Shown in pieces: positions 30,248 to 62,897 of a stretch of DNA of 64,000 nt. A program made the translations under genes and the position numbers. The notes beneath the pieces are model-generated. The model did no database searches. It saw nothing but the letters and a program-made list of their open reading frames with translations, and had not been told where the DNA came from. Position 1 is the first letter of the stretch. Each line of letters starts with the position of its first letter. This DNA is from Macrostomum lignano (lineage: Eukaryota). The stretch is taken from contig NIVC01000990.1 of NCBI GenBank assembly GCA_002269645.1, positions 62,001 to 126,000 of the forward strand, in the 5' to 3' direction.

Positions 30248-30722
30248 CATGGCTCAATATGGGATTTGCTGAGATGCCATGGCTCAATGGGGGATTTGCT
30301 GAGATGCCATGGCTCAATATGGGATTTGCTGAGATGCCATGGCTCAATGGGGGAGTTGCTGAGATGCCATGGCTCAATATGGGATTTGCTGAGATGCCAT
30401 GGCTCAATGGGGGATTTGCTGAGATGCCATGGCTCAATATGGGATTTGCTGAGATGCCATGGCTCAATGGGGGAGTTGCTGAGATGCCATGGCGCAATAT
30501 GGGATTTGCTGAGATGCCATGGCTCAATAGAGGAGTTGCTGAGATGCCATGGCTCAATAGAGGAGTTGCTGAGATGCCATGGCTCAATAGAGGAGTTGCT
30601 GAGATGCCATGGCTCAATGGGGGAGTTGCTGAGATGCCATGGCTCAATGGGGGAGTTGCTGAGATGCCATGACTCAATGGGGGGAGTTGCTGAGATGCTA
30701 TGACTCAATCGGGGAGTTGCTC
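30248..30722. repeat. 30-bp tandem array (GAGATGCCATGGCTCAATATGGGATTTGCT) with alternating variants
   Basis: The period is visible in register across the 60-nt lines. Confidence 0.96.
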
Positions 30723-31371: not shown

Positions 31372-31541
31372 CTGTTCATAATTGGCGTACAATTCAGTAT
31401 TATTAGCTCTGGGTGGCCACTGCTGAGCCTGAGCTGACAGCATTAGTGAGAACGGCTGTGTGAGGGCTCTGGAATTGGACGAGAAGTTTCGATGCACAAG
31501 CTGCATTGCACGGACTGACGACTACCGATATGATGAGGCAA
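31372..31541 (-). CDS. probable exon of unidentified gene X (acceptor choice and frame uncertain)
   Basis: Acceptor ttctag at 31542 abuts the array, with an alternative CAG at 31501. Perfect donor CAG|GTAAGT at 31371. Confidence 0.45.
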
Positions 31542-31549
31542 CTAGAACT

Positions 31550-32961: not shown

Positions 32962-32972
32962 GTACAGCTCAC

Positions 32973-33003
32973 TCCATAGCCAATGCGACCCAGCACAGGT
33001 GAG
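32973..33003 (-). CDS. probable 31-nt micro-exon of gene X (SPVLGRIGYG)
   Basis: Acceptor tttag at 33004, donor GTGAGC at 32972. Phase 2 in matches the donor at 35137, phase 0 out. Confidence 0.5.
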
Positions 33004-34978: not shown

Positions 34979-35137
34979 ACAAAACGCAGACAGACCAATT
35001 TAACAGCTACCTCGGACACTTTAATTAGTTCAACTGAATTTATCTTGGCAAAAATGGCAACACTTTTAACTGACAGAAAATACTAGAAATTCTGGCCGAC
35101 TGGTCGATTATAAACGCATTAAATCAATAATAATTAC

Positions 35138-35588
35138 TTTAATATTAAAGAATCGTCATTCCCTACCGCTTTCCCAGCAACATTATTTGCAAGCGATTGA
35201 TTGACAGTTAAATTACTACTGCTACTAGTAGTAACATCCGCACTATTGCAAACCCGATCGAAATAGTTATGCTTGGCTACCTTGTAATGCTTCAGATACA
35301 GCTGCATTGAGCTAGCCGAAATGGCGTTGCTACGCTGACGCGGCTTCAAGACTTGAGGCTGCTGCTGCTGCTGCTGTTGTTGCCGAGCAGCTCGAATATT
35401 CGACAACTGCTCCGACAGCTGCTGTTGCGCGGACGAGTCGTCCGCATCTGCGGCGCTAAACTCGGCGCCTTCGCTGGTGCTGCCGCTGCGCAAGGACTGC
35501 ACCGAGGCCGTAGTTGATTCCGCTTTGCCCAGATTGTTCGGTTCGCTCAGCATCTCAGATAATTGATGATAACACACACTGCACACAA
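35138..35588 (-). CDS. exon of unidentified gene X: VCSVCYHQL (CxxC, resembles a FYVE-type finger tail), polyQ, Ser-rich
   Basis: 150-codon GC-richer ORF preceded by a pyrimidine tract and AAG/CAG acceptor (phase 1). Donor AA|GTAATT at 35137 (phase 2). No upstream exons identified. Confidence 0.6.
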
Positions 35589-37791: not shown

Positions 37792-38684
37792 ACTCAGTAC
37801 CAAAGTCAGTGGACAAGAAACGCGCTTCCATCAGCCTCTGCGAGCAAGCAAGAGAGCCACCTTCCCTCATTCGCCTTCCTTCTGCGCACTTTTCAGACTT
37901 AGAAATAGAAAAAATCTGGGGCGTCGCCGATCTCAGAAGACCCGCGAGTAAGAGGAAGCCTAAAAACCGACGCGCCCACGCACAAAAAAGATTTTCTGTT
38001 GAATTCACAGATTCATATAAATGCATTTTTTTGTTAATGCTCGGCTCTTTTATTTGTTAATGCTCAGCTTTATTATCTTTGATGGATGGCTTCAAATGTC
38101 TTTGCATGGAATTCGCGCTCAGATTTGCGCTCACAGTCCCAGCCTAAACCAAGCGAGCCAACTGACGGGGACAAATGTACCTAAATGGCGATCCTTCTTC
38201 TGCTTTCAGCCTGCAGACTACACCAGCTGTAGCAAAAAACCTCGCTTGAAGTCGGAGCTTGATTTTTCAAAATAAAAAAAATTAACGATAATTTGTATTA
38301 GAAAAATACTTAACTAATACATCAAATCATTTTACTCTCTGCGGCTAAAGTACAAATATATGCATATAAATACAGGCGAGTAAGTTTTAATATTAATACG
38401 CGCGTATTTCTACTGATTGCCAGAGGAGTCAGTAGTATTTCAAGGGTGTGTTTTTTCATATATATGATAAGTATAACTAACTTTTTAACATGAAGTATAA
38501 ATCATAAATTTACGTATACAATAATAAAACAAAAATTATTTATTAGATACTCATACTGCTTGTTAATGCAATAACTTAAATCTGTACTATAAAAATATCT
38601 ACTTGCTAACATAAACTACTTATTCGTAAAATTGTATGTATATGTGCACGAGTTTCTTGCATCTGTCAATAATTACTTTAATTT

Positions 38685-39030
38685 GTACAAGAGCTGCTCT
38701 CATCTGTACAAGAATTGCATGCATCTGTACGAGAACTGTTCTCATCTGTACAAGAACTACTTGTCTGTACAAGAACTACTCATCTTACGAAAACTACTCA
38801 TCTGTACAAGAACTACTCATCTGTACAAGAACTACTCATCTGTACAAGAACTACTCATCTGTACAAGAACTACTCATCTGTACAAGAACTACTCATCTGT
38901 ACAAGAACTACTCATCTGTACAAGAACTACTCATCTGTACAAGAACTACTCATCTTACGAGAACTACTTATCTGTACAGGAACTGCTCTCATCTGTACAA
39001 GAACTACTTATTTCTACAATAATTACTCAT
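38685..39030. repeat. 19-bp array (CTGTACAAGAACTACTCAT), copy A
   Basis: Period 19. Confidence 0.95.
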
Positions 39031-39859
39031 AGTACTCATCGGAAATACTCATCGGTTTGTTTACCCAAAGCAGCAACACAGTCCCAGAGAGGATCACCGC
39101 ATTCATGCATAATTTCTATACTGTCATCAGCCGCATCAACATTAAAGCTCATAGCCCATACATGAATAGAATTAGATAATTTATAGCAAGCATACAAGAT
39201 TCAAAGGAGGTCAGAACCCTAATTAAATATGCAGCACAATGCCATATTCATCCACAACAGAAGTGAACAGTAGAAAAATCAGAATTTACTATTATTTTGA
39301 TAAAACTAGTCAGAAATAACCATAAAGTAGAGGGGGGTGGTAGGGGTCTACCGCGCAGTCAGTGAATACTGCGCACATATGTTTCTGATTTATAAATAAA
39401 ATATAATATATAGCATACGATACTTATCATCAATACTTAGAGCAGGAAAACTGCGCGGCAATGCCAACAGCGCGCGGATTTGGAGCAATAAAAAAGAAGG
39501 AAAGAAAAATTTCAAGCCCCACAAGCGCCCGGGGTACCAGCGGAATCCAAGTGAAAATTCGAGCGCCTGATATAGGCTTGAAGCCAAGCTGAAGCAAGGG
39601 CGGGTGGCGCTATATATGAATTATAATTTACAACTGCTTAACAGACACAGGGGCCAGTGCAGACAACGGCGGGTCAGAGGCTGAAGCGAAGCGAACTAGT
39701 AAAAGCAGTAGAAAGGCCAGTACTCGTAGTGTTATAAAATGTTATAAAGCGATTGCATATACACTGAAGTATATGCAGACAGTCAGGAGATGCACATTAC
39801 ATATATGTACACAGGCAGATGGTCACACATGCCAGACATGTTAGGGCAATGTACACACC

Positions 39860-41035
39860 CATCTGTACAAGAAATACACATCTGTACAAGAATTACTCAT
39901 CTGTACAAGAACTACACAACTGTACAAGAACTATAAATCTGTAAAAGAACTAGACATCTGCACAAAAACTAGAAATCTGTACAAGAACTAGACATCTGTA
40001 CAATAACTCTTCATCTGTACAAGAATTACTCATCTGTACAAGAACTAGACATCTGTACAAGAACTTCTCATCTGTAAATGAAGTACTCAGCTGTACAAGC
40101 AAGAACTACTCATCTCTACAAGAATTACTTATCTGTACAAGAACTACACAACTGTACAAGAACTGCTCATCTGTACAAGAACTACACAACTGTACAAGAG
40201 TTACTCATCTGTACAAGAACTACACAACTGTACAAGAACTACTCATCTCTACAAGAATTACTCATCTGTACAAGAACTACACAACTGTACAAGAACTGCT
40301 CATCTGTACAAGAACTACACAACTGTACAAGAATTACTCATCTGTACAAGAACTACTATCTGTACAAGAACTACTATCTGTACAAGAATTACTCATCTGT
40401 AAAAGAAGTACTCAGCTGTACAAGCAAGAACTACTCATCTCTACAAGAATTACTCATCTGTACAAGAATTACTCATCTGTACAAGAACTACTTATCTGTA
40501 CAAGAATTACTCCTCTGTACAAAAACTACTATCTGTACAAGAACTACTCATCTGTAAAAGAAGTACTCAGCTGTACAAGCAAGAACTACTCATCTCTACA
40601 AGAATTACTCATCTGTACAAGAATTACTCATCTGTACAAGAACTACTTATCTGTACAAGAATTACTCCTCTGTACAAAAACTACTATCTGTACAAGAACT
40701 ACTCATCTGTAAAAGAAGTACTCAGCTGTACAAGCAAGAACTACTCATCTCTACAAGAATTACTTATCTGTACAAGAAATACAAAACTGTACAAGAACTG
40801 CTCATCTGTACAAGAACTACACAACTGTACAAGAATTACTTATCTGTACAAGAACTACACAACTGTACAAGAATTACTCATCTGTACAAGAACTACACAA
40901 CTGTACAAGAACCACTCATCTGTACAAGAACTACTCATCTGCACAAGAACTGCTCATCTGCACAAGAACTGCTCATCTGTACAAGAATTACTCATCTGCA
41001 CAAGAACTGCTCATCTGTACAAGAATTACTCATAG
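39860..41035. repeat. 19-bp array (CTGTACAAGAACTACTCAT), copy B, with higher-order duplications
   Basis: Same monomer as 38685-39030. Confidence 0.95.
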
Positions 41036-47312: not shown

Positions 47313-47521
47313 TGTAAGAGCCGAGAATTTAGAGTAAGTTTACGAATTATATTTTGATGCAAGATAATTTACGAGCGATTAAATAGTCAGCGATGATAGA
47401 TCGATTAAAGTGACTCACCCAACTGGGGTGGTGGGCATGTACAGAGAAGAAAGCGAGATGCAAGTACATATACTAATAGAGCAGCCCCCACCCCGACGGC
47501 CCAAACCAAACGCAACCTACA
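47313..47521 (-). repeat. 3' LTR
   Basis: 207/209 identical to 52127-52335. Confidence 0.97.
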
Positions 47522-47524
47522 TCA

Positions 47525-47533
47525 CTCTCCCCC
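47525..47533 (-). other. polypurine tract (GGGGGAGAG)
   Basis: Immediately upstream of the 3' LTR on the - strand. Confidence 0.8.
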
Positions 47534-47629
47534 AAGAAAAATACATGGGATAAAAAAACGGGATAAAACAAAAGCAAACAAAAAAAGTTCATGCAACGCG
47601 AAAAAAGTCCCGATCAGAAAGAAAGCACG

Positions 47630-49024
47630 TCAACAGGTCGCCGTGTAAAAATCCGGCCGCCGGCGCTGCCTGCCCGACCGGCGCACCGTGTTGCCGGGTT
47701 CAGCCGCGTCCAGGTTGCGCAGCGGCTCCCAGGCGTCCGGGCCGGCCAGCTGACCCGCGGCGTCCTCGACGCTCTGACAGTCGTCCTCGGTGGCCGGCTT
47801 GGCTGGTGGCCTGTCGCTCAGATTCGGTCGGTCGATAAAGCGCTTCAAGCGGTCGTGGTGGACCAGCAAGCGGCGCCTGCCGTTCACAGCCTGCAGCCGG
47901 TAGTTCACAGGGCTGACCTTCTTAAGGACGATGAACGGGCCGGACCACCGGTTCGACAGCGACTTGCACTGGCCGCGCTTCATCGCATGGTGCGTCAGCA
48001 TCACTCGGTCACCGGTCTTGAAGTCGGTAGTCTCTGCCCCTAGGTTGTAGAACTCGTGCTGCGATTTCTGGGGCGTGTGCAGGTGCGCCCGCACTACCTG
48101 AAAGCCGCGCCTGATTCTTGCCTGCAGGTCCGCGCAGTCCTGCGGCTGGTCGCGCTGCCCACCGAGTGCCAAGTCGACCGGCAGTCTGGGCTCGATGCCG
48201 CGTAGCACTTTGAACGGCGACTCGCCCGTGGAGCTGTGCTCAGAGCTGTTGTAGGCCCACACGACATAGGGCAGCAGGGCGTCCCAGCTGGCCTGATTCT
48301 CTGAGCAGAATGCGGAGAGCATGTTGCCCAGCGTCCTATTGAACCTCTCGACGTTCCCGTTGCCGCTGGGGTGAAACGGTGAGGTCCTCGATTTTTCTGC
48401 TCCGAGCAGCGCGCAGGTCTGCTTGAAAACTTCGGCCTCAAACTGGCGACCTTGGTCCGAGTGCACGACCTCCGGAACTCCGTGCCGCAGCACCACACAG
48501 GTCACCAGAGCCTCGGCTACCGTCTTGGCGTCGATCTGGCTGAGGGCCGCCGCCTCCACCCACTTTGAAAATGTGTCGACAAAGCAGATGATGTAGCGCT
48601 TGCCAGACTCGGTGACTGGCAGTGGGCCCTTGATGTCGAGTTGCATGACAGCCCACGGCTTGGCCGGTAGCGGCTGCCGCACCAGCTCAGCACGCGCTCG
48701 CTTTGGCGCTCCCTTGCGTCGTTGGCAGACCAGGCAGCTCCGCACCCAGTCCCGCACGTCCTCGCGCATGTCCGGCCACCAGGAACGCTCGCGCAAAGCC
48801 CGCAGCACCCGCCGCTGTCCGAGGTGACCCGCGCTCGGCCGGTCGTGCGCCTGGTGCAGCAGCTCCGCTCTCATGTGCTGGGGGATCACCGGCAACCCGT
48901 TGTGGAGCAGTGCGCCGTCCGGTGACAGCGTCAGACAGGGCAGCAGCTTCTGGACCGACGCACTCACCGCCGCCGGAACTTGAAAGTTGGGCTGGAGCAT
49001 CGCGTGCCGAACCGCGTGCAGAAC
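47630..49024 (-). CDS. Gypsy integrase (HHCC, D-D-E, GPF), in frame with pol but separated from it by a TAG
   Basis: HDRPSAGHLG..CLVC; LDIKG, SDQG, VERFNRTL; WSGPF. Confidence 0.95.
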   Translation of the reverse strand, partial: VLHAVRHAMLQPNFQVPAAVSASVQKLLPCLTLSPDGALLHNGLPVIPQHMRAELLHQAHDRPSAGHLGQRRVLRALRERSWWPDMREDVRDWVRSCLVCQRRKGAPKRARAELVRQPLPAKPWAVMQLDIKGPLPVTESGKRYIICFVDTFSKWVEAAALSQIDAKTVAEALVTCVVLRHGVPEVVHSDQGRQFEAEVFKQTCALLGAEKSRTSPFHPSGNGNVERFNRTLGNMLSAFCSENQASWDALLPYVVWAYNSSEHSSTGESPFKVLRGIEPRLPVDLALGGQRDQPQDCADLQARIRRGFQVVRAHLHTPQKSQHEFYNLGAETTDFKTGDRVMLTHHAMKRGQCKSLSNRWSGPFIVLKKVSPVNYRLQAVNGRRRLLVHHDRLKRFIDRPNLSDRPPAKPATEDDCQSVEDAAGQLAGPDAWEPLRNLDAAEPGNTVRRSGRQRRRPDFYTATC

Positions 49025-51376
49025 CTAGTCCTGGTCCTGCTCGTCAGGCAGATTAGCGATCTGGAACTGCACCGCCGCTGCTCGGCTGAGGGTGTCTGGC
49101 ACGATGTTCTCCTTGCCGGGCCGGTACAGGATTTCCAGGGGGAACTCCTGAATGAGCTGTAGCCAACGTGCCAGCCGACCGGTTGGCTCCTTCGCGTTGA
49201 GCAGCCCAGTGATCGGCTTGTGGTCAGTGAACACCTGGATCTTGCAGCTGTTGCTCAGGTACATGCGGAACTGCTTGAGGCTCCAAACAATCGCGAGCAG
49301 CTCCCGGTCCGTGGTGCTGTAGTTGCGCTCTGCCTTGCTCAGCGTCCGGGAAGCGTAGGCCACTGGCAGCTCCTGGCCGTCGCGCTCCTGGCTGAGCACC
49401 GCACCCAAGGCCACAGCACTGCTGTCACAGCTGATGACGATAGGCCGGCTGAAGTCGGGCAGCTGGAGCACCGGGGCCTGGGTCAGCGCGTCCTTCAACT
49501 TTTTCAGCACCGCAGCATGCTCTGACGTCCACACGAAGCCGCCGCCCGCGCCTTTCTGAGCCAGGTGATGCAGCGGTTTGGCAATGTCAGAGAAGTTGGG
49601 CACGAACCTGCGGTAGAAGCTGAGCATGCCGATGATGCGTCGAACATCCTCCTCAGACTGCGGCTCCGGCATCCGCCTGATCGCCTCGACCTTCTCCGCG
49701 GCAGGTGCGATGCCGCTCTCAGAGACTTGGTGACCCAGGTACGTGACGCTCCGGTAGGCAAAGAAGCTCTTGTCTGGGTTCAGCTTCAGCTTGGCAGACC
49801 GCAGTCGATGCAGCACCTTGGACAGTGACTGAACGTGGTTCTCAAAGTCTCTGTTGAAGATGATCAGATCATCAATGTACGCGATGACCTCCTCCCAGCT
49901 CAGGCCGGTCATGATGAGCTCCATCATTCGCTGGTACGTCGCAGGCGCGTTGCACATGCCGAATCCCATTTTGCGGAATTGCATCAGGCCGCTCGGAGTG
50001 TAGAACGCTGTCAACGGCCGATCCTCCTCTCTGACCTCCACCTGAAGGAAGCCTTGGCGCATGTCGATCGTAGAGAACCATGAGCAGCCAGCCAAGGAGT
50101 CGAGCGCTTGGTGCAAATGCGGCAGCGGGTGGGCGTCCTTCACTGTGAGGTTGTTCAGCGCCCGCCAGTCTACACAGACTCGGATGTCATTATTCTTCTT
50201 TCTGACGATTATCAGGTTGCTCGCCCACGGGCTGGTGGAGGGCTCGATGACGCCGTGTTGTCGCATCTGCTCCAGCTTCTCGTCCACTTGCCTCCTGAAG
50301 GCGTGAGGCACCCGCCGAGGCCGTTGGCGAATCGGGCGAGCGCCGTCGTCCAGCTCAATCTTGTGCTGCGCTGCGCTGCTCGTACCAACGTCGAACTCAT
50401 GGACTGAGACCACGTCGGCAAATGCCCTCAGCAGCATTGCTAAACGGTTGCTGTCCTCCTCCGGCAGCTCCGGATTGATGTTGAACTGGTCTGCGGGGCC
50501 TCGCCACTCGTGCACGTCCTCGTCCTCGTCGATAACCTCCGCGCTCTCGAAGGTGCCGATGCTCTGGTTGGAGAACAGCGTGACCGGGCTGCAGCTGAGG
50601 TTGCACACTTGAACCGGAATCTTGCCGCTCTCTGAAGACACCGCGAACACGCGGCCGGGCAGCACTCCGATTCTGTCGATGAACTCCTGTGACGGCTCGA
50701 AGATGCCATGTGCCTGCTTGGTCTCGGTCGTCACGTCCACCACTTTAACTGACCTTGGCGGTACCACGACGGCGTCCTGAACTCTGGCGATGATCACTGT
50801 GGGTACCAAGCAACAAGACAGCGGGCCATCTTGCTTGGAATCGCAGTTACTGAACGGAACCGCCTCACCATCGAATGCGACTGTCTTGGCACCCTGGTCG
50901 ATGCTGAACTGCGATCTGGCCGCCTTGCTCACGAAATCCATCCCCAGGATGAAGTTTGGGCGAATCCCTCTGACCACCAGCACGTCCATTTGTCTGCGCA
51001 GCTGATGACTGAGTCGCACCGTAATGCTCACGCTTCCTAACAGCTCGAGAACGGAGCCGTCCACGGACACAGGCCTGACATCTGCCGGCTTCAGCTCGCA
51101 GCGACCGTCCAGCTCTCTCAAAGCAACGTCGCTGATCAGCGAGGTCTGCGCTCCGGTGTCCAGCAGCCAGCGGCACGGCTTGCCGTTTGCCTCTCCAGGT
51201 ATAAAAATAGCATGAAGCACGGGATTGCTCCTTGGGGTTGGTGTGGGTCCCGCACCCGTTGCACCAACCCTTAAAGGTTTCCCGGAGCCTTCGATGGGCA
51301 GACAGAGGCCTTGTGCCCCCGCCCAGAGCACTTGTGGCAGATGATCGGACCCGGCTGTTTCTCTCGCTGCTGACAT
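49025..51376 (-). CDS. Gypsy pol: aspartic protease, RT, RNase H (entered by -1 frameshift near 51283)
   Basis: LLDTGAQTSLI; IDMRQGF..YIDD; DSS..E..TDHKP. Ends at TAG 49025-49027. Confidence 0.96.
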   Translation of the reverse strand: MSAARETAGSDHLPQVLWAGAQGLCLPIEGSGKPLRVGATGAGPTPTPRSNPVLHAIFIPGEANGKPCRWLLDTGAQTSLISDVALRELDGRCELKPADVRPVSVDGSVLELLGSVSITVRLSHQLRRQMDVLVVRGIRPNFILGMDFVSKAARSQFSIDQGAKTVAFDGEAVPFSNCDSKQDGPLSCCLVPTVIIARVQDAVVVPPRSVKVVDVTTETKQAHGIFEPSQEFIDRIGVLPGRVFAVSSESGKIPVQVCNLSCSPVTLFSNQSIGTFESAEVIDEDEDVHEWRGPADQFNINPELPEEDSNRLAMLLRAFADVVSVHEFDVGTSSAAQHKIELDDGARPIRQRPRRVPHAFRRQVDEKLEQMRQHGVIEPSTSPWASNLIIVRKKNNDIRVCVDWRALNNLTVKDAHPLPHLHQALDSLAGCSWFSTIDMRQGFLQVEVREEDRPLTAFYTPSGLMQFRKMGFGMCNAPATYQRMMELIMTGLSWEEVIAYIDDLIIFNRDFENHVQSLSKVLHRLRSAKLKLNPDKSFFAYRSVTYLGHQVSESGIAPAAEKVEAIRRMPEPQSEEDVRRIIGMLSFYRRFVPNFSDIAKPLHHLAQKGAGGGFVWTSEHAAVLKKLKDALTQAPVLQLPDFSRPIVISCDSSAVALGAVLSQERDGQELPVAYASRTLSKAERNYSTTDRELLAIVWSLKQFRMYLSNSCKIQVFTDHKPITGLLNAKEPTGRLARWLQLIQEFPLEILYRPGKENIVPDTLSRAAAVQFQIANLPDEQDQD

Positions 51377-52092
51377 TGCGCTGCACGGTGTCCGAGCTGG
51401 CCGCAGTTGAAGCAGCCGCCTCCTCGCTGTTGACGGCGACGCCGAGTGTCGGTACCCGACTGTACGCTGACCCTCGCGATGAGCTCCTCCATGCGTTTCT
51501 CCAGTCGGTCCAGGCGGTCCTCGCTTGGTTCTGCCGATGATGTAGCGCTGACGGCTCCGACTGCCGCCACCGACTGTCGCCCAGCCAGCTCCTCCAGCCG
51601 AGCCGCCCGCTGCAGCAGAGTCTCCAGGCTGCAGGTCTCTGCGTCCTCTGCCTTAAGCAGGTTGTCACGAATGTCGGCCTTGAGCAGCTGCAGAAGCTTG
51701 AAGCGCACATCTCGGTCTCGCTGAGCAATTGAGTCCTCCGGTCTGGCTTTCTGGTGTAGCAGCTTCAGGTTAAAGCAGAGCTCACGCAGTGTCTCGGCAT
51801 CTCCACGTTTTTTCGCGTAGAAGTCGCTCATGGCCTTAAAGCTGTGGGCTTCGCCTCCATAAAACTTTGTGAGGTCCTCCTTTATACTTTTAAAACTCTT
51901 TTGTCTTGTCTCGGCCAGGTCCCAGACGACCAGTTGGGCTTCTCCCGTGAGCAGCAGCTTCACCTTCGACGCTGAGGTCGCGTCGTCCCATTTCGCATCG
52001 TTGGCGAATTCCTCAAAGATGCGCAGCCACTTTCTCACGTCAGTGCCGTCTGTTCCACTGAACTTTGGCGGTAGAAGGGTGTTCTGGGCCAT
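51271..52092 (-). CDS. Gypsy gag (273 aa) with two CCHC zinc knuckles
   Basis: MAQNTLLPPKFSG..WLRIFE; CFNCGQLGHRAAQC and CHKCSGRGHKASVC. Confidence 0.95.
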   Translation of the reverse strand: MAQNTLLPPKFSGTDGTDVRKWLRIFEEFANDAKWDDATSASKVKLLLTGEAQLVVWDLAETRQKSFKSIKEDLTKFYGGEAHSFKAMSDFYAKKRGDAETLRELCFNLKLLHQKARPEDSIAQRDRDVRFKLLQLLKADIRDNLLKAEDAETCSLETLLQRAARLEELAGRQSVAAVGAVSATSSAEPSEDRLDRLEKRMEELIARVSVQSGTDTRRRRQQRGGGCFNCGQLGHRAAQCQQREKQPGPIICHKCSGRGHKASVCPSKAPGNL

Positions 52093-52114
52093 GAGTGCAC
52101 TTGCACTGGGTTCT

Positions 52115-52125
52115 CGCTGCCACCA
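52115..52125 (-). other. primer-binding site TGGTGGCAGCG (complementary to tRNA-Leu 3' end)
   Basis: 1 nt from the 5' LTR. Matches the ...CGCTGCCA-CCA end of eukaryotic tRNA-Leu(AAG/TAG). Confidence 0.85.
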
Positions 52126-52126
52126 A

Positions 52127-52335
52127 TGTAAGAGCCGAGAATTTAGAGTAAGTTTACGAAGTATATTTTGATGCAAGATAATTTACGAGCGATTAAATAG
52201 TCAGCGATGATAGATCGATTAAAGTGACTCACCCAACTGGGGTGGTGGGCATGTACAGAGAAGAAAGCGGGATGCAAGTACATATACTAATAGAGCAGCC
52301 CCCACCCCGACGGCCCAAACCAAACGCAACCTACA
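52127..52335 (-). repeat. 5' LTR
   Basis: TG...CA, flanked by TSD GTAC. Confidence 0.97.
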
Positions 52336-54229: not shown

Positions 54230-54690
54230 CAAGCATCCCCCAATAGCAAATAACCCTAGATAGAAAGCATCCCTAGATAGCAAGAATCCCTATATAGCAA
54301 GCATAGGGCCTACCTAGATAAAAAGAATCATTATAAATAGCCAGCAATCCCTTTTTAGATACCAAGTACCCTCCACCTCCCAAGAGCAAGCATTTCCCAG
54401 ATAGTATGCATCCTTCCAATAGCAAGCATTTCCTAATAGCAAGTAGGCCTATGCCTATCTATTAGAAGACAAGTAGCTAATGCAACAATTGCCTTAGCTT
54501 TAGAGTGGCTCCATTTTTTTACCTGATGCATTTTTTATATTCTACATAATGTTCTTTTTTTGTTTTACAGAGTGCTTATTTTATGTTTGATATTGTGGCT
54601 CCTTTATGTTTGGCATTGTTGCTTTTTTTACATTTCAAATAAGTGTCTCTTTTATGTTTGAAATGGTAGTTCTTTTATGTTTGATATATA
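54230..54690. repeat. degenerate paralog of the 18-bp and 23-bp arrays of 44040-46670 (resumes at 57520-57660)
   Basis: AGCAAGCATCC and TTTATGTTTGA..GTGGCTC units joined by the same linker (GTAGCTA.TGC.ACAATT.CCTTAGCT.TA.AGTGGCTCC). Confidence 0.75.
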
Positions 54691-54816
54691 TACATGCACA
54701 ATTTCCAAAATTTGGTCGGCCATGCAACTTAGTTTTAACAAAAATGCGACATCATTTTTGGTCAAAAATGCGACTTACATGTAAAAAAAACCCTAAAGCA
54801 AAATTAATGCAACTTT

Positions 54817-54878
54817 GGGTAAACGGCTGGAACCTATGACTGTCTTATTAGGGCAAAATGCCTTGTCAGCTACTTAGT
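54817..54878 (+). pseudogene. 28S rRNA-derived fragment (H69-H71), copy 1, more diverged
   Basis: GGGTAAACGGCTGGAACCTATGACTGTCTTATTAGGGCAAAATGCCTTGTCAGCTACTTAGT aligns with copy 2 and with the recalled 28S consensus. Confidence 0.7.
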
Positions 54879-54977
54879 ACTACTTGGGTATTAATTTGGG
54901 TAGGCATTTTTGCGACTTACTTTGGTTGGCCGCCAAATCGGTCAGCTGGATTGGCCGACTTGGCCAACTGTTGCGCA

Positions 54978-55826
54978 TAGGGGGCGACCCAGTCCCGGGC
55001 CCGAAAAGTCGGGAATCCCAACCAAAATTGTGGCCCGACCCAGGCCCAGGCCCGACCCTAAAAAAGTCGGGAAATTGGGACAAGTCTTTTTTCCTTAAAG
55101 GCACTAACTGCGTGCGAATAAGAATAAAATTATTTTTCAACACATTCACACTAATTTACCTTTAATTCTAACCCCAGGAAAAGCTATGTAAAGGAACTAA
55201 AAATTCAAATAAAAGAATCAATCAACTGATTTGGTTCTTACTTCCTTACTGCTTCCAATGCCAAGTGCCTTACACTTAATGCTTTAGCTTTTTTTCTTTT
55301 TGCTTACTGCCAGTGCCAGCCGCACTGCCGCAGTGCCTGCTTGCCTACCTCACTGCCTGTTAGTGTCACTGTCACTGGCACACACACAGTACTTGTGCCA
55401 CACAGTGACATTGAATTTGAACTATTGAGTATATTGATATTTGTCATATTTGAGTATTAAGTCTTTTAATGTAACTCTTATGTATTCTGAAGTCTTAACT
55501 AATGTATTAAATAATATAAAATATATAAAATATATTATATGTATTATTTATATATTATAATATATTTCATATATTTATATATTATAATATATTTAATGTT
55601 TATCATATATTTATTATACATTTAATATATTATATTAGATTTAAAATATTCATATATTTATTATATATTTAATAGTAATCCGCATATGCTAAAAGTATTA
55701 AGATTTATTATGATTTTTTTCCAATTATTGAGCTGTCCTAAAGATCTTGTCCCGAATTCCCGAGGCCCAACCCGGGCCTGAGTCCTCATTCCCAGGCCCA
55801 ACTTTGGCCGTCCCGGTTGCCCCCTA
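54978..55826. mobile_element. non-autonomous hAT-type element (849 bp)
   Basis: TIRs TAGGGGGCGACC / GGTTGCCCCCTA. 8-bp TSD GTTGCGCA at 54970-54977 and 55827-55834. Confidence 0.92.
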
Positions 55827-55835
55827 GTTGCGCAT

Positions 55836-57508
55836 GTGGGCTTCTTGAAGTTTATGTTGATAAAATAGCTGCAATTTTGATAGGATCATAATTCCATCCC
55901 TAAAGGGTTTTTGATGGTGCTGATTTCAAATTTGAGCTCCATTTTTTGGTAGCTTTAACCTAATTATATGTAGCTTAAAGCCAACCACCGGGGCATGGGG
56001 AATAGGGGGGGGGGTTTAGGGTGGGGAGATTTTTCATGAGGATTGATTTTATCAACATAAACTTCAATAGAGGCATGGAGACCTATTGAAGGTTATGTTG
56101 ATTTATTCCAATCCTAATAGGGGGGGGGGGGTTGTAGCTTAAAGCCAACCACTGGGGCATAGGGAATAGGGGGTTTCAGGGTGGGGAGATTGAGTAAATT
56201 GTGATTGCATCAACCATACAGGTAACTTTCTGCTGTTTTTTTACATTTGTACTAGGGTTGTTTCCTGTGCACTGAGAATCCCACTAAATGCCACCAAACC
56301 CTATTGCAGCGCATGGCTTAAGTATGCCAGACGCCTACACAACCTGCGCCACGCTGTGAAATGACTTACCTGTGAAAGAAACCCTAAAGCAAAATTAACG
56401 CAGTTTTGGGTAAACGGCAGGAGTAACTATGACTGTCTTATCAAGCCTAAATGCCTCGGCATCTAATTAGTACTACGCCCGTATTCTATGGGGTGGCATT
56501 TTTGCGACTTACCCCTGGTCTACCACCAATGCTGCGCCATGCAGGCTGATCCGCGCCGGACGCCGTCCGCCAAAATGCCCATGCGCTGCAATCAGGCCAC
56601 CAAAGTTGTACTAGGGGTTAACTTCTGTCCCTACAAATGATTCCATAGCTGTCACTAAAGTTGTCGTAGTGGTATTCCCGTATGATACAAAATCTCGCTG
56701 CTGTTACCAAAGTTGTTACAGGCCTTTTGGCTCTCTATGCCACCAAAGTTGTAATAAAGCTATTTCTCCTTAACAATTCTACTGGTTATTAATTGTCTTT
56801 CTACTGGTAGCGCATGTACTTCTATTGGTAGCATATACTTTTATTGTACTTTCTGGCCTGAGCGGACTAATAGCACTGTCTATTCTATTCCTATACTTCC
56901 CCCTAAAGATATTATTCTCTTAGTCCTGGCGTTCCCGGGATCAGAGGGTCACAGCTTATGCTCCTTTTTCTGCCCTGAGGCGATCTTCTCTCGTTATGAG
57001 GCGGTTCTCCTGCCCTGAGGCGAATTTACTATAACTGCCCTGAGGCGGTTTCTTGCTTGTAGCAGTTCTTTTGGTAATACTCCCAATTTGGGGTTTTATA
57101 CTGTCAAAATGAGTAAGTTGAGTAAAAATGCTTTGGAATATTTATCAAGTGAACTAATTGTCACTGTCTTGCCTGAGCATGCAGGAAGGAGAGTTTATCC
57201 TCTTGGCCCATTCTGGGCTCCTATTTATACCGTTTTGCCTATGTATTAAAAACAAAATTGGTTTCGTACAATATTAATTGCGTTCACAACATTAAAACAA
57301 AATTATTAGCATTTTTGCAAGAATTCAAATAATGGTCTTTCTAAGAAATAAATGTAACACAAATAGGCTTTAAAGTATTCATACTGTATTACAAGAAGCT
57401 CTTCCTCACATTTTTGAGATTTTGGGTGTCCCATAAGTGTCTACTGCAAGTTTTAGAAAAATTGGAAAATTGAAAGTATTTTATCAACATAAACTTCAAG
57501 AAGCCCAC
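55836..57508. mobile_element. TIR-bounded composite element(s), 31-bp inverted ends GTGGGCTTCTTGAAGTTTATGTTGATAAAAT
   Basis: Exact reverse complement at 57478-57508. Two partial internal copies form a hairpin near 56047-56101. No TSD resolved. Confidence 0.65.
56408..56471 (+). pseudogene. 28S rRNA-derived fragment (H69-H71, R2/I-PpoI target region), copy 2
   Basis: GGGTAAACGGCAGGAGTAACTATGACTGTCTTATCAAGCCTAAATGCCTCGGCATCTAATTAGT versus recalled metazoan GGGTAAACGGCGGGAGTAACTATGACTCTCTTAAGGTAGCCAAATGCCTCGTCATCTAATTAGT: 54/64 ungapped by manual count. Confidence 0.88.
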
Positions 57509-58609
57509 CCATATATATTGATATAGTGCCTTTTTTATGTTGACATGGTGTCTTTTTTATGTTTGACATTGTACCTTTTTTATTTTTGACATAATAGCTC
57601 TTTTATGTTTAACAAGGTGGCGTGGCTCTTTTATGTTTGACATGTGGCTCCTTTATGCTTGATATACATATAGTGCCTCTGGTAACAGTCTACTTTGGTT
57701 ATAGCCATTGGCATTATTAAAGTAATTATTGCTAAACTTAATTATCATAAAAATAAAGTGTTGATAATGATAGTCATTAAATCTGCTTTGTTGCTGAAGT
57801 GGCTGTTTACTCAAATGGCTGTTGTTAATAAAGTGGATTGTATTTGTGCCTTTTATGTTTGATATGACACTTCTTTGATATATTATAGGCTTAAAGGGTA
57901 CTTTTTGTTTAGCATTTTTAAATAAAAGGCTTTTAAATAAAAAAACTTACACTTTTTAGATTCAAACTTATATTAGGTTGCTACATTGTCATTAGCAGTC
58001 TTAAACTGTTCAAATCTAGTCTAGGTTAGCTCTTATAAAATTTATAATATAAATTAGGGCCCACAGTCTTTATAATTCAATATGCCTACTGACAAAAAAT
58101 TGGTTAGAGTAAAAGTTTTGACATAGGCCCTAATCAATTTCTCAGTCAGCGACAGACCATTTTAAGCAGTGCTGGGCAAGTTAATCAATTTTTTTAACTC
58201 GTTAAAAGTTAAAAAGTTAATTTAATTGCTCCAAAAAAATTAACTGTAACTAGTTAATTATTTAACTTTTGCCCAAAATTTAACTTCTGAAAAGTTAAAA
58301 GTTAAAGTTAATAATTCCCTTACGGAAAAAGTGACATTTTCCCGGACATGTGTTCGGCGTGTTTTTTAAATTTCAGGTCGGCGCGGCGCGGCTGTGGCCA
58401 GGTCGCGGCGCCCTGGGGAGCTTGTCAGGGAATACTCCCCTGGGAATTAGACTGGGGACCCCGGGAAGAAAAAAAGCATTTTTAACTAAATTTTTGCCAT
58501 TTAAATAAGAAAATCATTCACAGAAAGCTGATTGAAACTCTGTCTATGCTTTTTTACCGCAAAACTGCTTATTTCAATGTATTACTTCAAACACAACACA
58601 CGTTTGAAT

Positions 58610-60710: not shown

Positions 60711-62897
60711 TTAGCTACACTCAGTGAGTTCTTTTCTGACTCTTTTTTCATTTGTAGCATATCCTATCTTGTGCATTTGATTGCTATTTAAGAGGTATTG
60801 ACAGAAGTATTTTTTCCTGATCTCTTCAGTTTGTGGACATTCGGTCAAGTAGTGTAGAATGTCAGAACCATTTCGCGCTCCACACATTTTACATGGTTCT
60901 TGAGAAAAAAAGTTGGGTGTAATCTCGCATTTCAGTTTTAGGAGGGTTGTTAAGAATTTTTTGTTTCTAAATGTACATGGAAAGTAATCTGAAAGGTCGG
61001 GCTTGCAGATTTTTTTGTAGAGATAGGCGTTTTTGTAGAGTTTAATATGTTGCTGATTCTCTAGCTTTTGGCTAAGTTCTCTTTCTCTGTGTATCTTGAG
61101 GTGCTTTTTCACTAGGTATTTCTCGTTATTAAAGCTTTGGGAAAGTTTATCTTCAGTTAGTGCTTTTAGGTCTATACTTTCTAGTTTCTTTAGTACATTC
61201 ATTTTCCATGGATTTTTTTGGCCGGTGCTTGAGTAGAAAATTTCTAGAGTCGTTTGGCAGAGTTTTTTGTGTCTAATCTTCAGCCAGTAGATGAGGTAGG
61301 TTTTAGCGATTCGTTGAGAGATTGGAGTAAGCTCAAGTTCTGATGATATCACACTGTTGCTAGCAAATTTTGGTAGATTGAGGAGATATTTGTAGAATTT
61401 CAGCTGAATATTATCAATAGCTTTTGTATCAGACATGGTAGCCAGAGGGCCCCAGAGCTCACAACCGTAAGTGATAACGGGGGTAACAAGCGCGTCAAAT
61501 AGTCTGCGAATGAGTGTGATGTCTAGGGACGTATTCTTTACCCTATGGAGTAGGGAAAACATGGCTGCATATCCCTGCTTAGTTTGGTGTTCAATACATT
61601 TTTTAAAGCTGTTTTTTGGTTCAAAAATAATTCCCAGGTATTTAAATTCATTTACTTCTTCTATTTCTTGGTTGTCGTAGTATATTTTTGTAGCAATGCT
61701 ATCTGTGTCGTTTTTTTGTCTGGTATTGCCCTGCATAAACTTTGTTTTGCTTGCGTTTACTTTCAAGTAATTTTGTTTGCAGTAATTTTCCATAGTCGTA
61801 AATGTGTCTTGAAGTTCGTCTTTGTTTTTAGCTAGAATGGCTTGATCGTCTGCAAAGAGTAGGATGAGTGGGAAAGCAGATCTCGTAAGAGAGCGCCTAG
61901 CGCTAGAGAGTTCAAGATATTCAACAATGTCGTCAATATATAGTTCAAAAAGAATGGTAGAGAGAGGGTTGCCTTGAAGAACACCTTTAGATATTGAGAT
62001 TGGCTGGGTTTCATCATCATCATCATCATCTTTTTTTAGAATGAAGCAGGCATTTTTATGCATGTTCTTGATAAGTTCCATCATTTGACCTTTAATACCC
62101 TGATTATCCGTTTTGCACCAAAGGGTCGGTTGATTTAAGCTATCGAAGGCTTTTTCATAGTCAACAAATCCAATAAAGAGTTCTTCTTTGTTGTAGATGG
62201 ATTGGTTTATAATGTTGTAAAGATTAAAACATTGGTCGATTGTGCTGTGATTGGGCTTGAAACCGTATTGGTATTTTGATATAAGATTGTTTGCGTATGC
62301 TAGGTTTTCGAGTCTGGATTTAATAATTTGGCAAAAGAGCTTGCCAAGAATTGGTTGAATGCAGATTCCTCTGTAATTGTTGGGGTCGGCACTGCTGCCT
62401 TTGTTTTTATAAATCGGATGAAGTGTATTTGTTATCCAACTAGTTGGGAAGGTTCCTTGTTTGAGTGCTTCGTTGAAAAGTGAGCATAGGAGGTCAGCAA
62501 GTTCGTTCTCGAGGTATTTGAGTGTTTCTACATATACTTTATCGTGCCCAGGTGCTTTGTCGGTTTTGAGCTTTTTGATATGTTTTATAACTTCTTCTTT
62601 GGTGAATGGGGCATTGAAATCCTCTAAATCAGCCAGAATAGGGTTGTCAAGGTGAAGATTGTATGATAGTCTAATGCTGCTGTCTTGTTCAGTTACAAGA
62701 TTTTGAAAGTGTATGACAAATTTTTCATCAATTGTTACTCTGTTGTTTGAGGGATTTGGTGTTTTTAATAAGTTCCAAAGTTGTTTTGTATCGTTTTGAA
62801 TAAAGGCCTGGTTGATCATGTTGTCTGCACAGAGAGTTGTTTCAAATTTCCATGAAGTGAGCTTTTTTTCGTATGCTTTTTGCGAGGTGGGGCAATT
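60711..62897 (-). CDS. non-LTR retrotransposon (LINE) reverse transcriptase ORF, 5'-truncated (no APE domain); clade unresolved (CR1/L2 group or RTE-X like)
   Basis: KAPGHD, QYGFK, FVDYEKAFDS, GVLQG, LFADD, KYLG, and C-terminal CKMC..H...C. The frame is open upstream of ATG 62819 to a TAA at 62898-62900. Confidence 0.93.
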   Translation of the reverse strand, partial: NCPTSQKAYEKKLTSWKFETTLCADNMINQAFIQNDTKQLWNLLKTPNPSNNRVTIDEKFVIHFQNLVTEQDSSIRLSYNLHLDNPILADLEDFNAPFTKEEVIKHIKKLKTDKAPGHDKVYVETLKYLENELADLLCSLFNEALKQGTFPTSWITNTLHPIYKNKGSSADPNNYRGICIQPILGKLFCQIIKSRLENLAYANNLISKYQYGFKPNHSTIDQCFNLYNIINQSIYNKEELFIGFVDYEKAFDSLNQPTLWCKTDNQGIKGQMMELIKNMHKNACFILKKDDDDDDETQPISISKGVLQGNPLSTILFELYIDDIVEYLELSSARRSLTRSAFPLILLFADDQAILAKNKDELQDTFTTMENYCKQNYLKVNASKTKFMQGNTRQKNDTDSIATKIYYDNQEIEEVNEFKYLGIIFEPKNSFKKCIEHQTKQGYAAMFSLLHRVKNTSLDITLIRRLFDALVTPVITYGCELWGPLATMSDTKAIDNIQLKFYKYLLNLPKFASNSVISSELELTPISQRIAKTYLIYWLKIRHKKLCQTTLEIFYSSTGQKNPWKMNVLKKLESIDLKALTEDKLSQSFNNEKYLVKKHLKIHRERELSQKLENQQHIKLYKNAYLYKKICKPDLSDYFPCTFRNKKFLTTLLKLKCEITPNFFSQEPCKMCGARNGSDILHYLTECPQTEEIRKKYFCQYLLNSNQMHKIGYATNEKRVRKELTECS

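What the first reader, a model, noticed from the sequence alone, without database searches (positions are those of the whole stretch)
54779..56592. Two diverged cassettes in which the 28S rRNA R2/I-PpoI target region lies antisense inside a 128-129 nt GT-AG unit followed by a 14-nt micro-exon
Seen in sequence: on the - strand both copies read GTAAGTCGCAAAAATGCC...[antisense 28S]...TTAATTTTGCTTTAG | 14 nt | GTAAGTC. Copy 1 has intron-like 54920-54793 and exon GGTTTTTTTTACAT. Copy 2 has 56512-56384 and exon GGTTTCTTTCACAG. Splice-like signals and spacing are kept although the copies have diverged. Against the recalled 28S consensus, copy 2 has only 3 mismatches outside an 8-nt block. That block (AGGTAGCC replaced by TCAAGCCT in copy 2, TTAGGGCA in copy 1) is exactly where R2 and I-PpoI cut. 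Copy 2 also sits between perfect 14-bp inverted repeats (56303-56316, 56579-56592). Established: H69-H71 is a near-universal ribosomal core and a hotspot for R2, Pokey and group I introns. Inference: a dispersed element carrying an excised intronic RNA complementary to the 28S functional centre, an uncleavable target-site decoy, or a captured rDNA scrap now amplifying. I do not know of a description of this architecture.
Basis: partly seen in the sequence, partly recalled or inferred. Interest (0 to 1): 0.85.

Follow-up and report, generated by a model that had tools for sequence, protein, structure and literature searches.

The report
28S rDNA scrap inside flatworm transposon
Two old, diverged copies of a ~150-bp repeat in the flatworm Macrostomum lignano carry a 65-bp piece of 28S ribosomal DNA, one of them inside a small cut-and-paste transposon; the intron-like look is real on paper, but nothing I could test shows that it is spliced or acts on ribosomes.

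Summary
The sequence facts are correct. Two ~150-nt units (54772-54920, 56363-56512; 82% identical) read on the minus strand GTAAGTC…TTTAG | 14 nt | GTAAGTC. Each holds a 65-nt core clearly derived from 28S rDNA around the R2 site.

The window is Macrostomum lignano, in a transposon-rich stretch with no annotated gene over the cassettes. Copy 2 is the middle of a 297-bp element with perfect 14-bp terminal inverted repeats and a clean 9-bp target-site duplication, so it is cargo of a MITE-like DNA transposon.

The "5' splice site" is one instance of a motif (TAAGTYGCA) that occurs three times in copy 1, once as CTAAGT. The splice-like sites lie 83-85 nt inside the transposon ends. Neither strand folds better than shuffled sequence. 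A third, partial relative elsewhere has lost the GT and lacks the 28S part.

The odd 8-nt block is not unusually variable between the copies. It looks like one ancestral small lesion at the R2 site.

Best reading: a dispersed repeat or MITE carrying a captured rDNA fragment, probably neutral. That is a new member of a known kind. Only 273 kb of the genome could be searched, so copy number, transcription and splicing remain untested.

The parts
56363..56512 (-). Cassette copy 2. Minus strand reads GTAAGTC (56512-56506), a 129-nt GT…AG unit (56512-56384), the 14-nt spacer GGTTTCTTTCACAG (56383-56370), and a second GTAAGTC (56369-56363).
56407..56471 (+). 28S rDNA-derived core of copy 2, sense on the + strand (GGGTAAACGG…TTAGT). 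It has 3 mismatches outside the 8-nt block TCAAGCCT, which replaces AGGTAGCC at the R2 nick.
   Evidence: score 86 vs shuffle max 24-27; reference
56299..56595 (.). 297-bp MITE-like TIR element that carries copy 2 as its central cargo. TIRs are 56303-56316 and 56579-56592 (14 bp perfect; about 17-18 bp with 2 differences). Arms are GC-rich (55% and 65%) against 43% for the cargo.
56290..56298 (.). Left copy of the 9-bp target-site duplication GCCACCAAA.
   Evidence: Removing the element plus one TSD restores ATGCCACCAAAGTTGTACTA, which matches the intact neighbouring motif at 56737-56756.
56596..56604 (.). Right copy of the 9-bp target-site duplication GCCACCAAA.
54772..54920 (-). Cassette copy 1. 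A 128-nt GT…AG unit (54920-54793), the 14-nt spacer GGTTTTTTTTACAT (54792-54779), and a second GTAAGTC (54778-54772). Here the flanking direct repeat is 10 nt, GTAAGTCGCA (54920-54911 and 54778-54769).
54816..54878 (+). 28S rDNA-derived core of copy 1. It is more diverged: a 2-nt deletion, about 6 mismatches, and the block TTAGGGCA.
   Evidence: score 64 vs shuffle max 27
54723..54778 (-). Downstream flank of copy 1, made of reiterations of the cassette's own 5' motif. TAAGTYGCA occurs at 54777 and 54731 (the latter as CTAAGTTGCA). GTCGCATTTTTG occurs at 54774 and 54750. Part of this flank is shared with the L023 relative.

Best explanation
The two cassettes are old, diverged copies of a short interspersed repeat of Macrostomum lignano. 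Its middle contains a ~65-bp fragment copied from 28S rDNA, in the H69-H71 region around the R2 site.

In copy 2 the repeat is the central cargo of a 297-bp non-autonomous DNA transposon with terminal inverted repeats. That element inserted by cut-and-paste and made a 9-bp target-site duplication. Copy 1 is a more decayed relative with no clear ends, lying 1.6 kb away among other nested transposons.

The rDNA piece was most likely acquired once, by a common ancestor. Plausible routes are template switching or gap-repair capture, or copying from a damaged or R2-associated rDNA unit. It already carried a small lesion at the R2 site: about +2 nt after CTTA and -2 nt (TA) after AAGG. It has since drifted neutrally.

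The GTAAGTC 'splice donors' are instances of a reiterated internal motif (TAAGTYGCA followed by an A/T run). The GT…AG…14 nt…GT layout is a by-product of that repeat structure.

Shown: the 28S origin of the core, the TIRs and TSD of copy 2, the reiterated motif, the lack of fold signal, and the absence of an annotated gene. Inferred: the capture mechanism, neutrality, and the single ancestral lesion.
For: - **Source.** M. lignano assembly GCA_002269645.1, contig NIVC01000990.1.
- **28S core.** Scores 86 and 64 against a shuffle maximum of 27. Both copies share derived differences from 28S (GACTGTCTTAT; ACTAC after TTAGT), so they have a common, already diverged ancestor.
- **Copy 2 is a transposon insertion.** Perfect 14-bp TIRs and a 9-bp TSD. 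The reconstructed empty site matches an intact neighbouring motif. Arms are 55-65% GC and the cargo 43%.
- **Splice-like sites are internal.** They lie 83 and 85 nt inside the element's ends.
- **Reiterated motif.** TAAGTYGCA occurs 6 times in the window against 1.3 expected, 4 of them in the cassettes. GTYGCAWWWWTG occurs 5 times against 0.4 expected, 4 in the cassettes. Three instances of each lie in copy 1, one reading CTAAGT.
- **No structure signal.** z-scores +0.72 to -0.69 on both strands of both copies. No Rfam match. No tRNA-like head.
- **A third relative.** On contig NIVC01000368 (L023 23522-23578, E about 2e-4) it shares only a 57-nt module. It has ATAATT instead of GTAAGT and no 28S part.
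- **Setting.** Nested transposons and a minisatellite.
- **Precedent.** Non-autonomous TEs carrying rDNA-derived modules are documented (PMC10946416).
Against: - Only two full copies were seen. Neither the 297-bp backbone nor the cassette was found again in 209 kb of other M. lignano DNA. 'Family' therefore rests on two copies plus one partial relative.
- Copy 1 has no convincing TIR or TSD. It could be the source locus or a local duplication rather than a transposed copy.
- The crude pattern GTAAGT, 90-170 nt, AG, 8-25 nt, GTAAGT is rare: one other hit in 152 kb scanned on both strands. The intron-like layout is therefore not trivially expected.
- The clustering of differences from 28S exactly at the R2 nick is non-random and is only explained by inference.
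- Transcription was not tested.
Confidence: 0.65

Rival explanations
1. The 28S-like core is a relic of the 3' junction of a 28S-site-specific (R2-type) retroelement, or of a severely 5'-truncated retro-insertion bounded by the 7-10-bp direct repeat GTAAGTC(GCA). It was later carried along inside the MITE. In that case the odd block is the element/target junction itself.
For: - Some R2 lineages carry a diverged 28S-like sequence at the end of the 3' UTR, directly abutting authentic downstream 28S. Flatworms have R2 families that lost target specificity (PMC5035012).
- The cassette core has the same layout: 33 nt resembling upstream 28S, then the odd block at the R2 nick, then 23 nt resembling downstream 28S.
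- A 10-bp direct repeat flanks a 132-nt segment in copy 1.
Against: - The upstream-like part (2 mismatches in 33 nt) and the downstream-like part (1 in 23 nt) are about equally similar to 28S in copy 2.
- There is no poly(A) or recognisable LINE tail at either end.
- The L023 relative shares a module that straddles the putative insert/TSD boundary.
- The 'TSD' motif occurs three times in copy 1.
- The only LINE in the window is APE-type and unrelated to the cassette.
- No M. lignano R2 sequence was available for comparison.
Confidence: 0.15
2. The units are genuine spliceosomal introns flanking 14-nt micro-exons in an unannotated minus-strand transcript, for example a long 5' region of the downstream nuclear-receptor gene or a lncRNA. 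The excised intron is an antisense RNA that pairs with 28S H69-H71.
For: - GTAAGT donor motifs that fit the 5' splice-site consensus (CAG|GTAAGT at the second site of copy 2), a pyrimidine-rich tract before AG, and unit lengths of 128-129 nt.
- Both copies are on the same strand as the nuclear-receptor gene at 12-35 kb.
- The layout is rare by chance.
Against: - No annotated gene lies between window 39025 and 61376 other than the LTR pol.
- The splice-like sites are internal to a transposon with a clean TSD.
- The GT belongs to a reiterated motif with a CT variant.
- The L023 relative has lost the GT.
- No fold signal.
- 14 nt is not a multiple of 3.
- From general knowledge, excised introns are short-lived and H69-H71 is buried in the assembled subunit.
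- I know of no precedent.
Confidence: 0.05
3. The cassette is an uncleavable mimic of the R2/I-PpoI target that titrates a 28S-specific endonuclease (a decoy).
For: About 33 nt upstream and 23 nt downstream of the R2 nick are retained, while the 8 nt at the nick are changed in both copies.
Against: - Two copies in 273 kb. I would expect rDNA target copies to be far more numerous (general knowledge; rDNA copy number in M. lignano not checked here).
- Copy 1 has decayed further within the flanks a protein would need: a 2-nt deletion and about 6 substitutions. That argues against constraint.
- Between copies the block is no more variable than the rest.
- No R2 element was found nearby.
Confidence: 0.02
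4. The cassette is an introner-like module: a transposon that brings its own 3' splice site and takes the 5' site from its target-site duplication, so that insertions into genes are spliced out.
For: - Published introners include families that carry the 3' site and co-opt the 5' site from the TSD, and families that add a few codons (bioRxiv 10.1101/2022.06.06.494994).
- Here the direct repeat contains GTAAGT, and 14 nt + 7 or 10 nt = 21 or 24 nt, a multiple of 3.
Against: - Both copies have the same 'TSD', and homology continues about 20 nt beyond it, so they are not independent insertions of the 132-nt core.
- The verified transposon ends lie 83 and 85 nt outside the splice-like sites.
- Neither copy is in an annotated gene.
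- The two introner surveys searched do not mention Macrostomum, flatworms or Platyhelminthes.
Confidence: 0.03
5. There is no mobile family. Copy 1 is simply a local genomic sequence containing an old rDNA pseudogene fragment, and the MITE at 56299-56595 picked up about 170 bp of it once (or the reverse, a local duplication).
For: - Homology between the copies is confined to about 170 nt and stops inside the MITE arms.
- The copies are 1.6 kb apart, and none was found in 209 kb elsewhere.
- Arm and cargo GC content differ.
Against: A partial relative exists on a different contig. 82% identity implies an old event, after which more copies could exist unseen.
Confidence: 0.1

Closest known systems
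Transduplication / Pack-MULE-type capture of host DNA by non-autonomous TIR transposons
   Same: A short TIR element with a 9-bp TSD whose internal part is foreign host sequence of different base composition from the arms.
   Different: The cargo is a 65-bp rRNA-gene fragment embedded in other repeat sequence, not a protein-gene fragment. The superfamily is unassigned, since no transposase was seen. The capture mechanism is inferred. Animal examples are uncommon: Turmoil-1 of C. elegans (PMC2572040) is listed.
TEs with rDNA-derived modules (SINE28 with 28S sequence; Pokey/mPok with IGS repeats; 5S-derived SINEs; Cassandra)
   Same: A non-autonomous mobile element containing a piece of rDNA. 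Review PMC10946416 lists these and considers most such modules neutral products of modular reshuffling.
   Different: SINE28 is a mammalian retroposon. Here the carrier is a TIR/TSD DNA element in a flatworm. The captured piece is the H69-H71/R2-site region and carries no promoter. No such case is in the review's Table 2.
[quoted passage not shown]
   Same: A diverged copy of the 28S sequence next to the R2 site resides inside a mobile element, and the discontinuity falls at the R2 insertion point.
   Different: No RT/RLE ORF, no R2 3' UTR and no rDNA context here. The cassette also contains sequence resembling 28S downstream of the site, and it lies in a DNA transposon.
Introners (intron-generating MITE-like transposons)
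   Same: A small TIR/TSD element associated with GT…AG signals and a direct repeat containing the donor.
   Different: The splice-like sites are 83-85 nt inside the element. The copies are intergenic. There is no evidence of splicing. The 'TSD' is identical in both copies.
Dispersed rDNA pseudogene fragments ('rDNA-like junk')
   Same: A short, decayed piece of 28S outside the rDNA array (Robicheau et al. 2017 as cited in PMC10946416).
   Different: Here the fragment is duplicated and at least once embedded in a transposon with intact ends.

Membership tests
MITE / non-autonomous TIR DNA transposon (copy 2) | Terminal inverted repeats at both ends | tested here: met
   14 bp perfect at 56303-56316 and 56579-56592, extendable to about 17-18 bp with 2 differences.
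MITE / non-autonomous TIR DNA transposon (copy 2) | Target-site duplication of fixed length flanking the TIRs, with a reconstructable empty site | tested here: met
   GCCACCAAA at 56290-56298 and 56596-56604. Removing the element restores ATGCCACCAAAGTTGTACTA, which matches the intact motif at 56737-56756.
MITE / non-autonomous TIR DNA transposon (copy 2) | Small size and no coding capacity | tested here: met
   297 bp. Only ORFs of 50 aa or less. No protein homologue.
MITE / non-autonomous TIR DNA transposon (copy 2) | Multiple copies with the same ends at different loci | tested here: not met
   Neither the arms nor the TIR recur in 273 kb of M. lignano DNA. That is about 0.04% of the ~764-Mb assembly size I recall (not checked here), so the test is weak.
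MITE / non-autonomous TIR DNA transposon (copy 1) | TIRs and TSD | tested here: inconclusive
   Only a weak ~13-bp candidate, ATTTGG(T)CGGCCA, and no TSD. One side abuts another nested element.
28S rDNA-derived sequence | Significant alignment to the eukaryotic 28S H69-H71/R2-site region | tested here: met
   Scores 86 and 64 against a shuffle maximum of 27. Reference taken from printed oligos. Rfam's LSU model did not report this short fragment.
Spliceosomal intron plus micro-exon | GT…AG with consensus donor and a pyrimidine tract | tested here: met
   GTAAGT donors and TTAATTTTGCTTTAG acceptors in both copies.
Spliceosomal intron plus micro-exon | Lies within a transcribed gene, with spliced transcripts | not testable with these tools
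   No annotated gene over window 39025-61376 except the LTR pol. No RNA data accessible. ORF handles were not on record elsewhere.
Spliceosomal intron plus micro-exon | Splice signals conserved better than surrounding sequence among related copies | tested here: inconclusive
   Kept in the two copies. Lost (ATAATT) in the only other relative. Too few copies to judge.
Introner | Splice sites at or next to the element's termini or TSD, so the whole element is removed | tested here: not met
   The sites are 83 and 85 nt inside the verified ends. Criteria.
Introner | Many near-identical copies located in genes as introns | tested here: not met
   Two copies at 82% identity, in an intergenic TE-rich setting.
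SINE (including SINE28-type) | Pol III-type head (tRNA, 7SL or 5S) or defined rRNA head, a LINE-related or A-rich tail, and variable TSDs | tested here: not met
   No tRNA-like sequence. No Rfam hit. No A-rich tail. The flanking direct repeat is identical in both copies.
R2 / R2-derived element | RT with restriction-like endonuclease, or an R2 UTR; insertion in 28S | tested here: not met
   No such ORF near the cassettes. The neighbouring LINE has RVT_1 only, and its homologues carry APE domains. The locus is not rDNA.
Structured non-coding RNA | Folding energy or covariation beyond chance, or a match to a known family | tested here: not met
   z +0.72 to -0.69. No Rfam match at E of 10 or less.

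The most novel reading that the evidence does not exclude
A flatworm transposon family has domesticated a 28S H69-H71 fragment as part of a splice-competent module. Wherever the element lands in a transcribed region on the right strand, a ~129-nt lariat antisense to the ribosome's functional centre (or to pre-rRNA or R2 co-transcripts) is released. The reiterated GTAAGTYGCA motif serves as U1-binding donor sites. This would be an introner-like element with an rRNA-antisense payload.
Probability: 0.04. Interest if true: 0.75.

Novelty: new member of a known kind. Interest (0 to 1): 0.2.

Why it matters
If the ordinary reading holds, this is one more documented case of a transposon shuffling a piece of rDNA around a genome. 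It is mildly useful for three reasons.
- It is a DNA-transposon carrier of 28S coding sequence in an animal. The 2024 review lists only SINE28 for 28S.
- The captured piece spans the R2 site and carries a small lesion exactly there. That hints that damaged or R2-associated rDNA units are the ones that leak into the genome.
- Such fragments can mislead rRNA read filtering and repeat annotation in M. lignano.

It would matter much more only if splicing or an antisense-28S RNA were demonstrated.

Tried and rejected
- **Rfam.** Gathering threshold over the whole window, and E up to 10 over 54300-57000: nothing relevant.
- **Metagenome scan** with GTAAGTCGCAAAAATGCC: 20 loci, and none contains more than the 18-mer.
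- **Search for the homeologous or allelic locus** via near-identical LTR pol and integrase proteins (L022, L026). Both are merely other insertions of the same LTR element with unrelated flanks.
- **Sampling of nine other M. lignano loci** (209 kb) with an nhmmer profile and blastn: only the partial L023 relative.
- **Protein-handle tricks.** The translated MITE as a query found no candidates. Exact look-up of ORFs overlapping the cassettes found nothing on record.
- **Extension of 28S homology** into the flanks carrying GT and AG: not significant.
- **Structured RNA:** rejected.
- **tRNA-SINE:** rejected.
- **LINE 3' UTR origin** from the neighbouring LINE: rejected. There is no similarity, and it is APE-type with its closest homologues at about 31% identity.
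- **Hypervariability of the 8-nt block between copies:** rejected.
- **Simple 'retro-insert plus 10-bp TSD' model:** weakened by the L023 module straddling the boundary and by the third motif copy.
- **Literature search** for MITEs with 28S cargo: confounded by the arachnid meaning of 'mite'.
Full report

Yes.
- Copy 1: GTAAGTCGCAAAAATGCC starting at 54920; …TTAATTTTGCTTTAG ending at 54793 (128 nt); GGTTTTTTTTACAT at 54792-54779; GTAAGTC at 54778-54772.
- Copy 2: 56512-56384 (129 nt); GGTTTCTTTCACAG at 56383-56370; GTAAGTC at 56369-56363.

A repeat search, motif searches and an nhmmer profile find exactly two copies in the 64-kb window. They are 82% identical over 151 aligned columns.

To test the 28S claim without relying on memory, I took the R2 target sequence printed in three papers. 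These were PMC13000458, bioRxiv 10.1101/2024.11.11.623112 and PMC4370867, which together give a 105-nt reference.
- A 65-nt core (GGGTAAACGG…TTAGT) aligns with local scores of 86 (copy 2) and 64 (copy 1). The maximum in 500 shuffles is 27, and the next-best score anywhere in the window is 23.
- Copy 2 has three mismatches outside the 8-nt block, as claimed.
- The block spans the R2 bottom-strand nick. The cleaved-product oligos place that nick between AAGG and TAGCC.
- The homology cannot be shown to extend into the 45-nt and 41-nt flanks that carry the AG and GT signals.
- The perfect 14-bp inverted repeats around copy 2 are confirmed.

**2. Where are we?**

An exact protein look-up places the window on contig NIVC01000990.1 of GCA_002269645.1, with window position p equal to contig position p + 62000. 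That assembly is Macrostomum lignano Mlig_3_7.

The window holds several recognisable features.
- A nuclear-receptor gene on the minus strand, with its zf-C4 exon at 19892-20545.
- A 5-kb Gypsy-type LTR element at about 47313-52335.
- An APE-type LINE fragment at 60711-62819.

Between window 39025 and 61376 the only gene on record is the LTR pol. The cassettes lie in a pile of nested repeats.
- A 23-nt minisatellite lies on both sides.
- An ~860-bp TIR element with a 3-bp TSD lies at 54972-55834.
- Another element is bounded by 43-bp TIRs at 55836-55878 and 57466-57508, and it encloses copy 2.

**3. What is copy 2?**

It is the central part of a 297-bp element at 56299-56595.
- It has perfect 14-bp TIRs and a 9-bp direct duplication, GCCACCAAA, immediately outside them.
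- Deleting the element plus one duplicate restores ATGCCACCAAAGTTGTACTA. This is the same motif that stands intact 140 bp away at 56737-56756. It is therefore a textbook cut-and-paste insertion.
- The arms are 55% and 65% GC, and the cassette 43%.
- Homology to copy 1 covers only about 170 nt and stops inside the arms. The cassette behaves as cargo in a MITE-like backbone.
- The splice-like sites are 83 and 85 nt from the element's ends.

**4. What are the 'splice sites'?**

GTAAGTC is rare in this genome sample: 8 occurrences in 152 kb scanned on both strands, 4 of them in the cassettes. However, it is not an isolated signal.
- In copy 1 the flanking direct repeat is 10 nt, GTAAGTCGCA.
- The longer motif TAAGTYGCA occurs three times on copy 1's minus strand, at 54919, 54777 and 54731. 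The third instance reads CTAAGTTGCA.
- GTYGCAWWWWTG also occurs three times in copy 1.
- Both motifs are significantly over-represented in the window purely because of the cassettes.

The donor-like heptamer is therefore one instance of a reiterated internal motif, as is common in the subterminal regions of TIR transposons. Two such instances 142 nt apart produce the 'GT … AG | 14 nt | GT' picture.

**5. Any sign of RNA function?**

- Neither strand of either unit folds better than dinucleotide shuffles (z +0.72, -0.07, -0.39, -0.69).
- There is no Rfam family match at E up to 10 and no tRNA-like head.
- ORFs across the cassettes are 50-77 aa. They are not on record in any other assembly. A translated-element search found nothing.

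Transcription and splicing could not be tested with the tools available.

**6. Other copies.**

The only route to more M. lignano DNA was through proteins.
- I fetched nine other loci (209 kb) around paralogous LTR pol genes.
- None is the homeologue of this locus.
- A profile search finds no further full copy and no other 28S-like fragment.
- It does find one partial relative on contig NIVC01000368 (L023 23522-23578, E about 2e-4).

The relative shares a 57-nt module: TTAATTTTTGCTTAAGGGTTTCTTTTACAG|ATAATTTGCATATTTGGTCACAAAAT. It keeps the AG and the 14-nt spacing. It has ATAATT where the cassettes have GTAAGT, and it lacks the 28S part upstream. It also continues into the sequence that flanks copy 1, so the module straddles the putative 'insert/TSD' boundary.

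A metagenome scan with the 18-mer returned only chance hits.

**7. The 8-nt block.**

- Between the two copies it has 4 of 8 mismatches. In 89% of permutations some 8-nt window does at least as badly, so it is not a hypervariable spot.
- Relative to 28S, however, the differences in both copies cluster there.
- A gapped alignment describes both copies as about +2 nt after CTTA and -2 nt (TA) after AAGG, plus ordinary substitutions.
- Together with the shared derived changes elsewhere (GACTGTCTTAT; ACTAC after TTAGT), this points to one ancestral small lesion at the R2 site, followed by drift.

Why a lesion should lie exactly there is open. The source may have been a damaged or R2-associated rDNA unit, or the 3' junction of an R2-type element. 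Some R2 lineages carry a diverged 28S-like stretch in their 3' UTR, and flatworms have R2 families that lost target specificity (PMC5035012). I could not test this, because no M. lignano R2 or rDNA sequence was reachable. The LINE in the window is APE-type and unrelated.

**8. Comparison with what is known.**

Non-autonomous TEs carrying rDNA-derived modules are an established phenomenon.
- Examples are 5S-derived SINEs, Cassandra, Pokey/mPok with IGS repeats, and SINE28 with 28S sequence.
- The 2024 review PMC10946416 considers most such modules neutral products of modular reshuffling.
- A TIR/TSD DNA element with a 28S coding fragment is not in its table, so this would be a new member of that kind.

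Introners are the one known class in which MITE-like elements and splice sites go together. Their defining geometry is splice sites at the termini or TSD, with copies inside genes. That geometry is not met here.

**9. Verdict.**

- The most economical explanation is a captured rDNA scrap in an old repeat or MITE, with intron-like features produced by a reiterated motif (confidence about 0.65).
- The main alternatives concern the origin of the fragment: an R2-type junction relic (about 0.15), or a one-off local capture (about 0.10).
- The antisense-intron, decoy and introner readings have no positive evidence. Together I give them about 0.1. They remain formally untested for lack of RNA data and genome-wide copies.
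- Interest is low to modest.

Noticed in passing
window 12733-20545 and 35134-35586 (minus strand): Nuclear-receptor gene. There is a C4 zinc-finger exon (Pfam zf-C4, E 7e-11) with a Gln-rich N-terminal region. A further poly-Q ORF at 35134-35586 may be an upstream exon. The cassettes lie about 19 kb upstream on the same strand.
   Followed up: partly
window ~47313-52335 (minus strand): A Gypsy-type LTR retrotransposon of about 5 kb. Its LTRs of at least 209 bp lie at 47313-47521 and 52127-52335. It has gag (zf-CCHC), protease-RT-RNaseH (783 aa) and integrase (456 aa), with pol split into two ORFs. Copies 98-99% identical lie on at least five other contigs, so the family is young and probably recently active in M. 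lignano.
   Followed up: partly
window 60711-62819 (minus strand): A 702-aa LINE reverse-transcriptase ORF with a C-terminal CCHC knuckle. Its nearest database relatives are only about 31% identical, several named ones are from Chlorella, and many carry APE endonuclease domains. No close M. lignano paralogue is on record.
   Followed up: partly
window 54527-54686 and 57526-57665; L022 1-1720: A 23-nt minisatellite (consensus about TGNCTCTTTTATGTTTGAYATNG) flanks the whole cassette region in the same orientation. It forms a 1.7-kb array on another contig, so it is a dispersed satellite or part of a larger element.
   Followed up: no
window 54972-55834: An ~860-bp TIR element (TGCGCA(AC)TAGGGGGCRACC ends) with a 3-bp TSD, TGT, at 54969-54971 and 55835-55837. 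It contains GGGCC/CCCGG-rich subterminal repeats and an AT-rich palindromic centre (55500-55680). It is inserted at the very tip of the next element.
   Followed up: partly
window 55836-57508: A ~1.67-kb unit bounded by 43-bp inverted repeats (93% complementary; GTGGGCTTCTTGAAGTTTATGTTGATAAAATA…). It encloses the copy-2 MITE, and further copies of the same terminal motif occur at 56046-56102. It is likely another DNA transposon family.
   Followed up: no
window 3620-4492, 30135-33002, 38632-40557: Long tandem arrays that stay open in several reading frames. Examples are a 30-nt unit giving PLQTPATLPH repeats over about 1.4 kb, GFWDSGIREGL-type repeats, and THLYKNYSSVQELLICTR repeats. These regions have strong GC skew. 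They are presumably minisatellites rather than genes.
   Followed up: no
L006, L007, L008, L013, L017 (metagenome contigs, e.g. Ga0056126): Five of the chance 18-mer hits share longer similar flanks with each other (…TTGCAGTAAGTCGCAAAAATGCCAC…TTTAGC/TAGCACCAAATTT…). They look like an interspersed repeat of some host eukaryote in those metagenomes. They are unrelated to the cassette beyond about 21 nt.
   Followed up: no
L022 ~14286 (minus strand): This is the only other hit to the crude pattern GTAAGT, 90-170 nt, AG, 8-25 nt, GTAAGT in 152 kb. It lies inside the range of an annotated LRR/PDZ gene on the same strand, so it may be a real short intron plus micro-exon. That would make it a useful positive control for what such a structure looks like in M. 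lignano.
   Followed up: no
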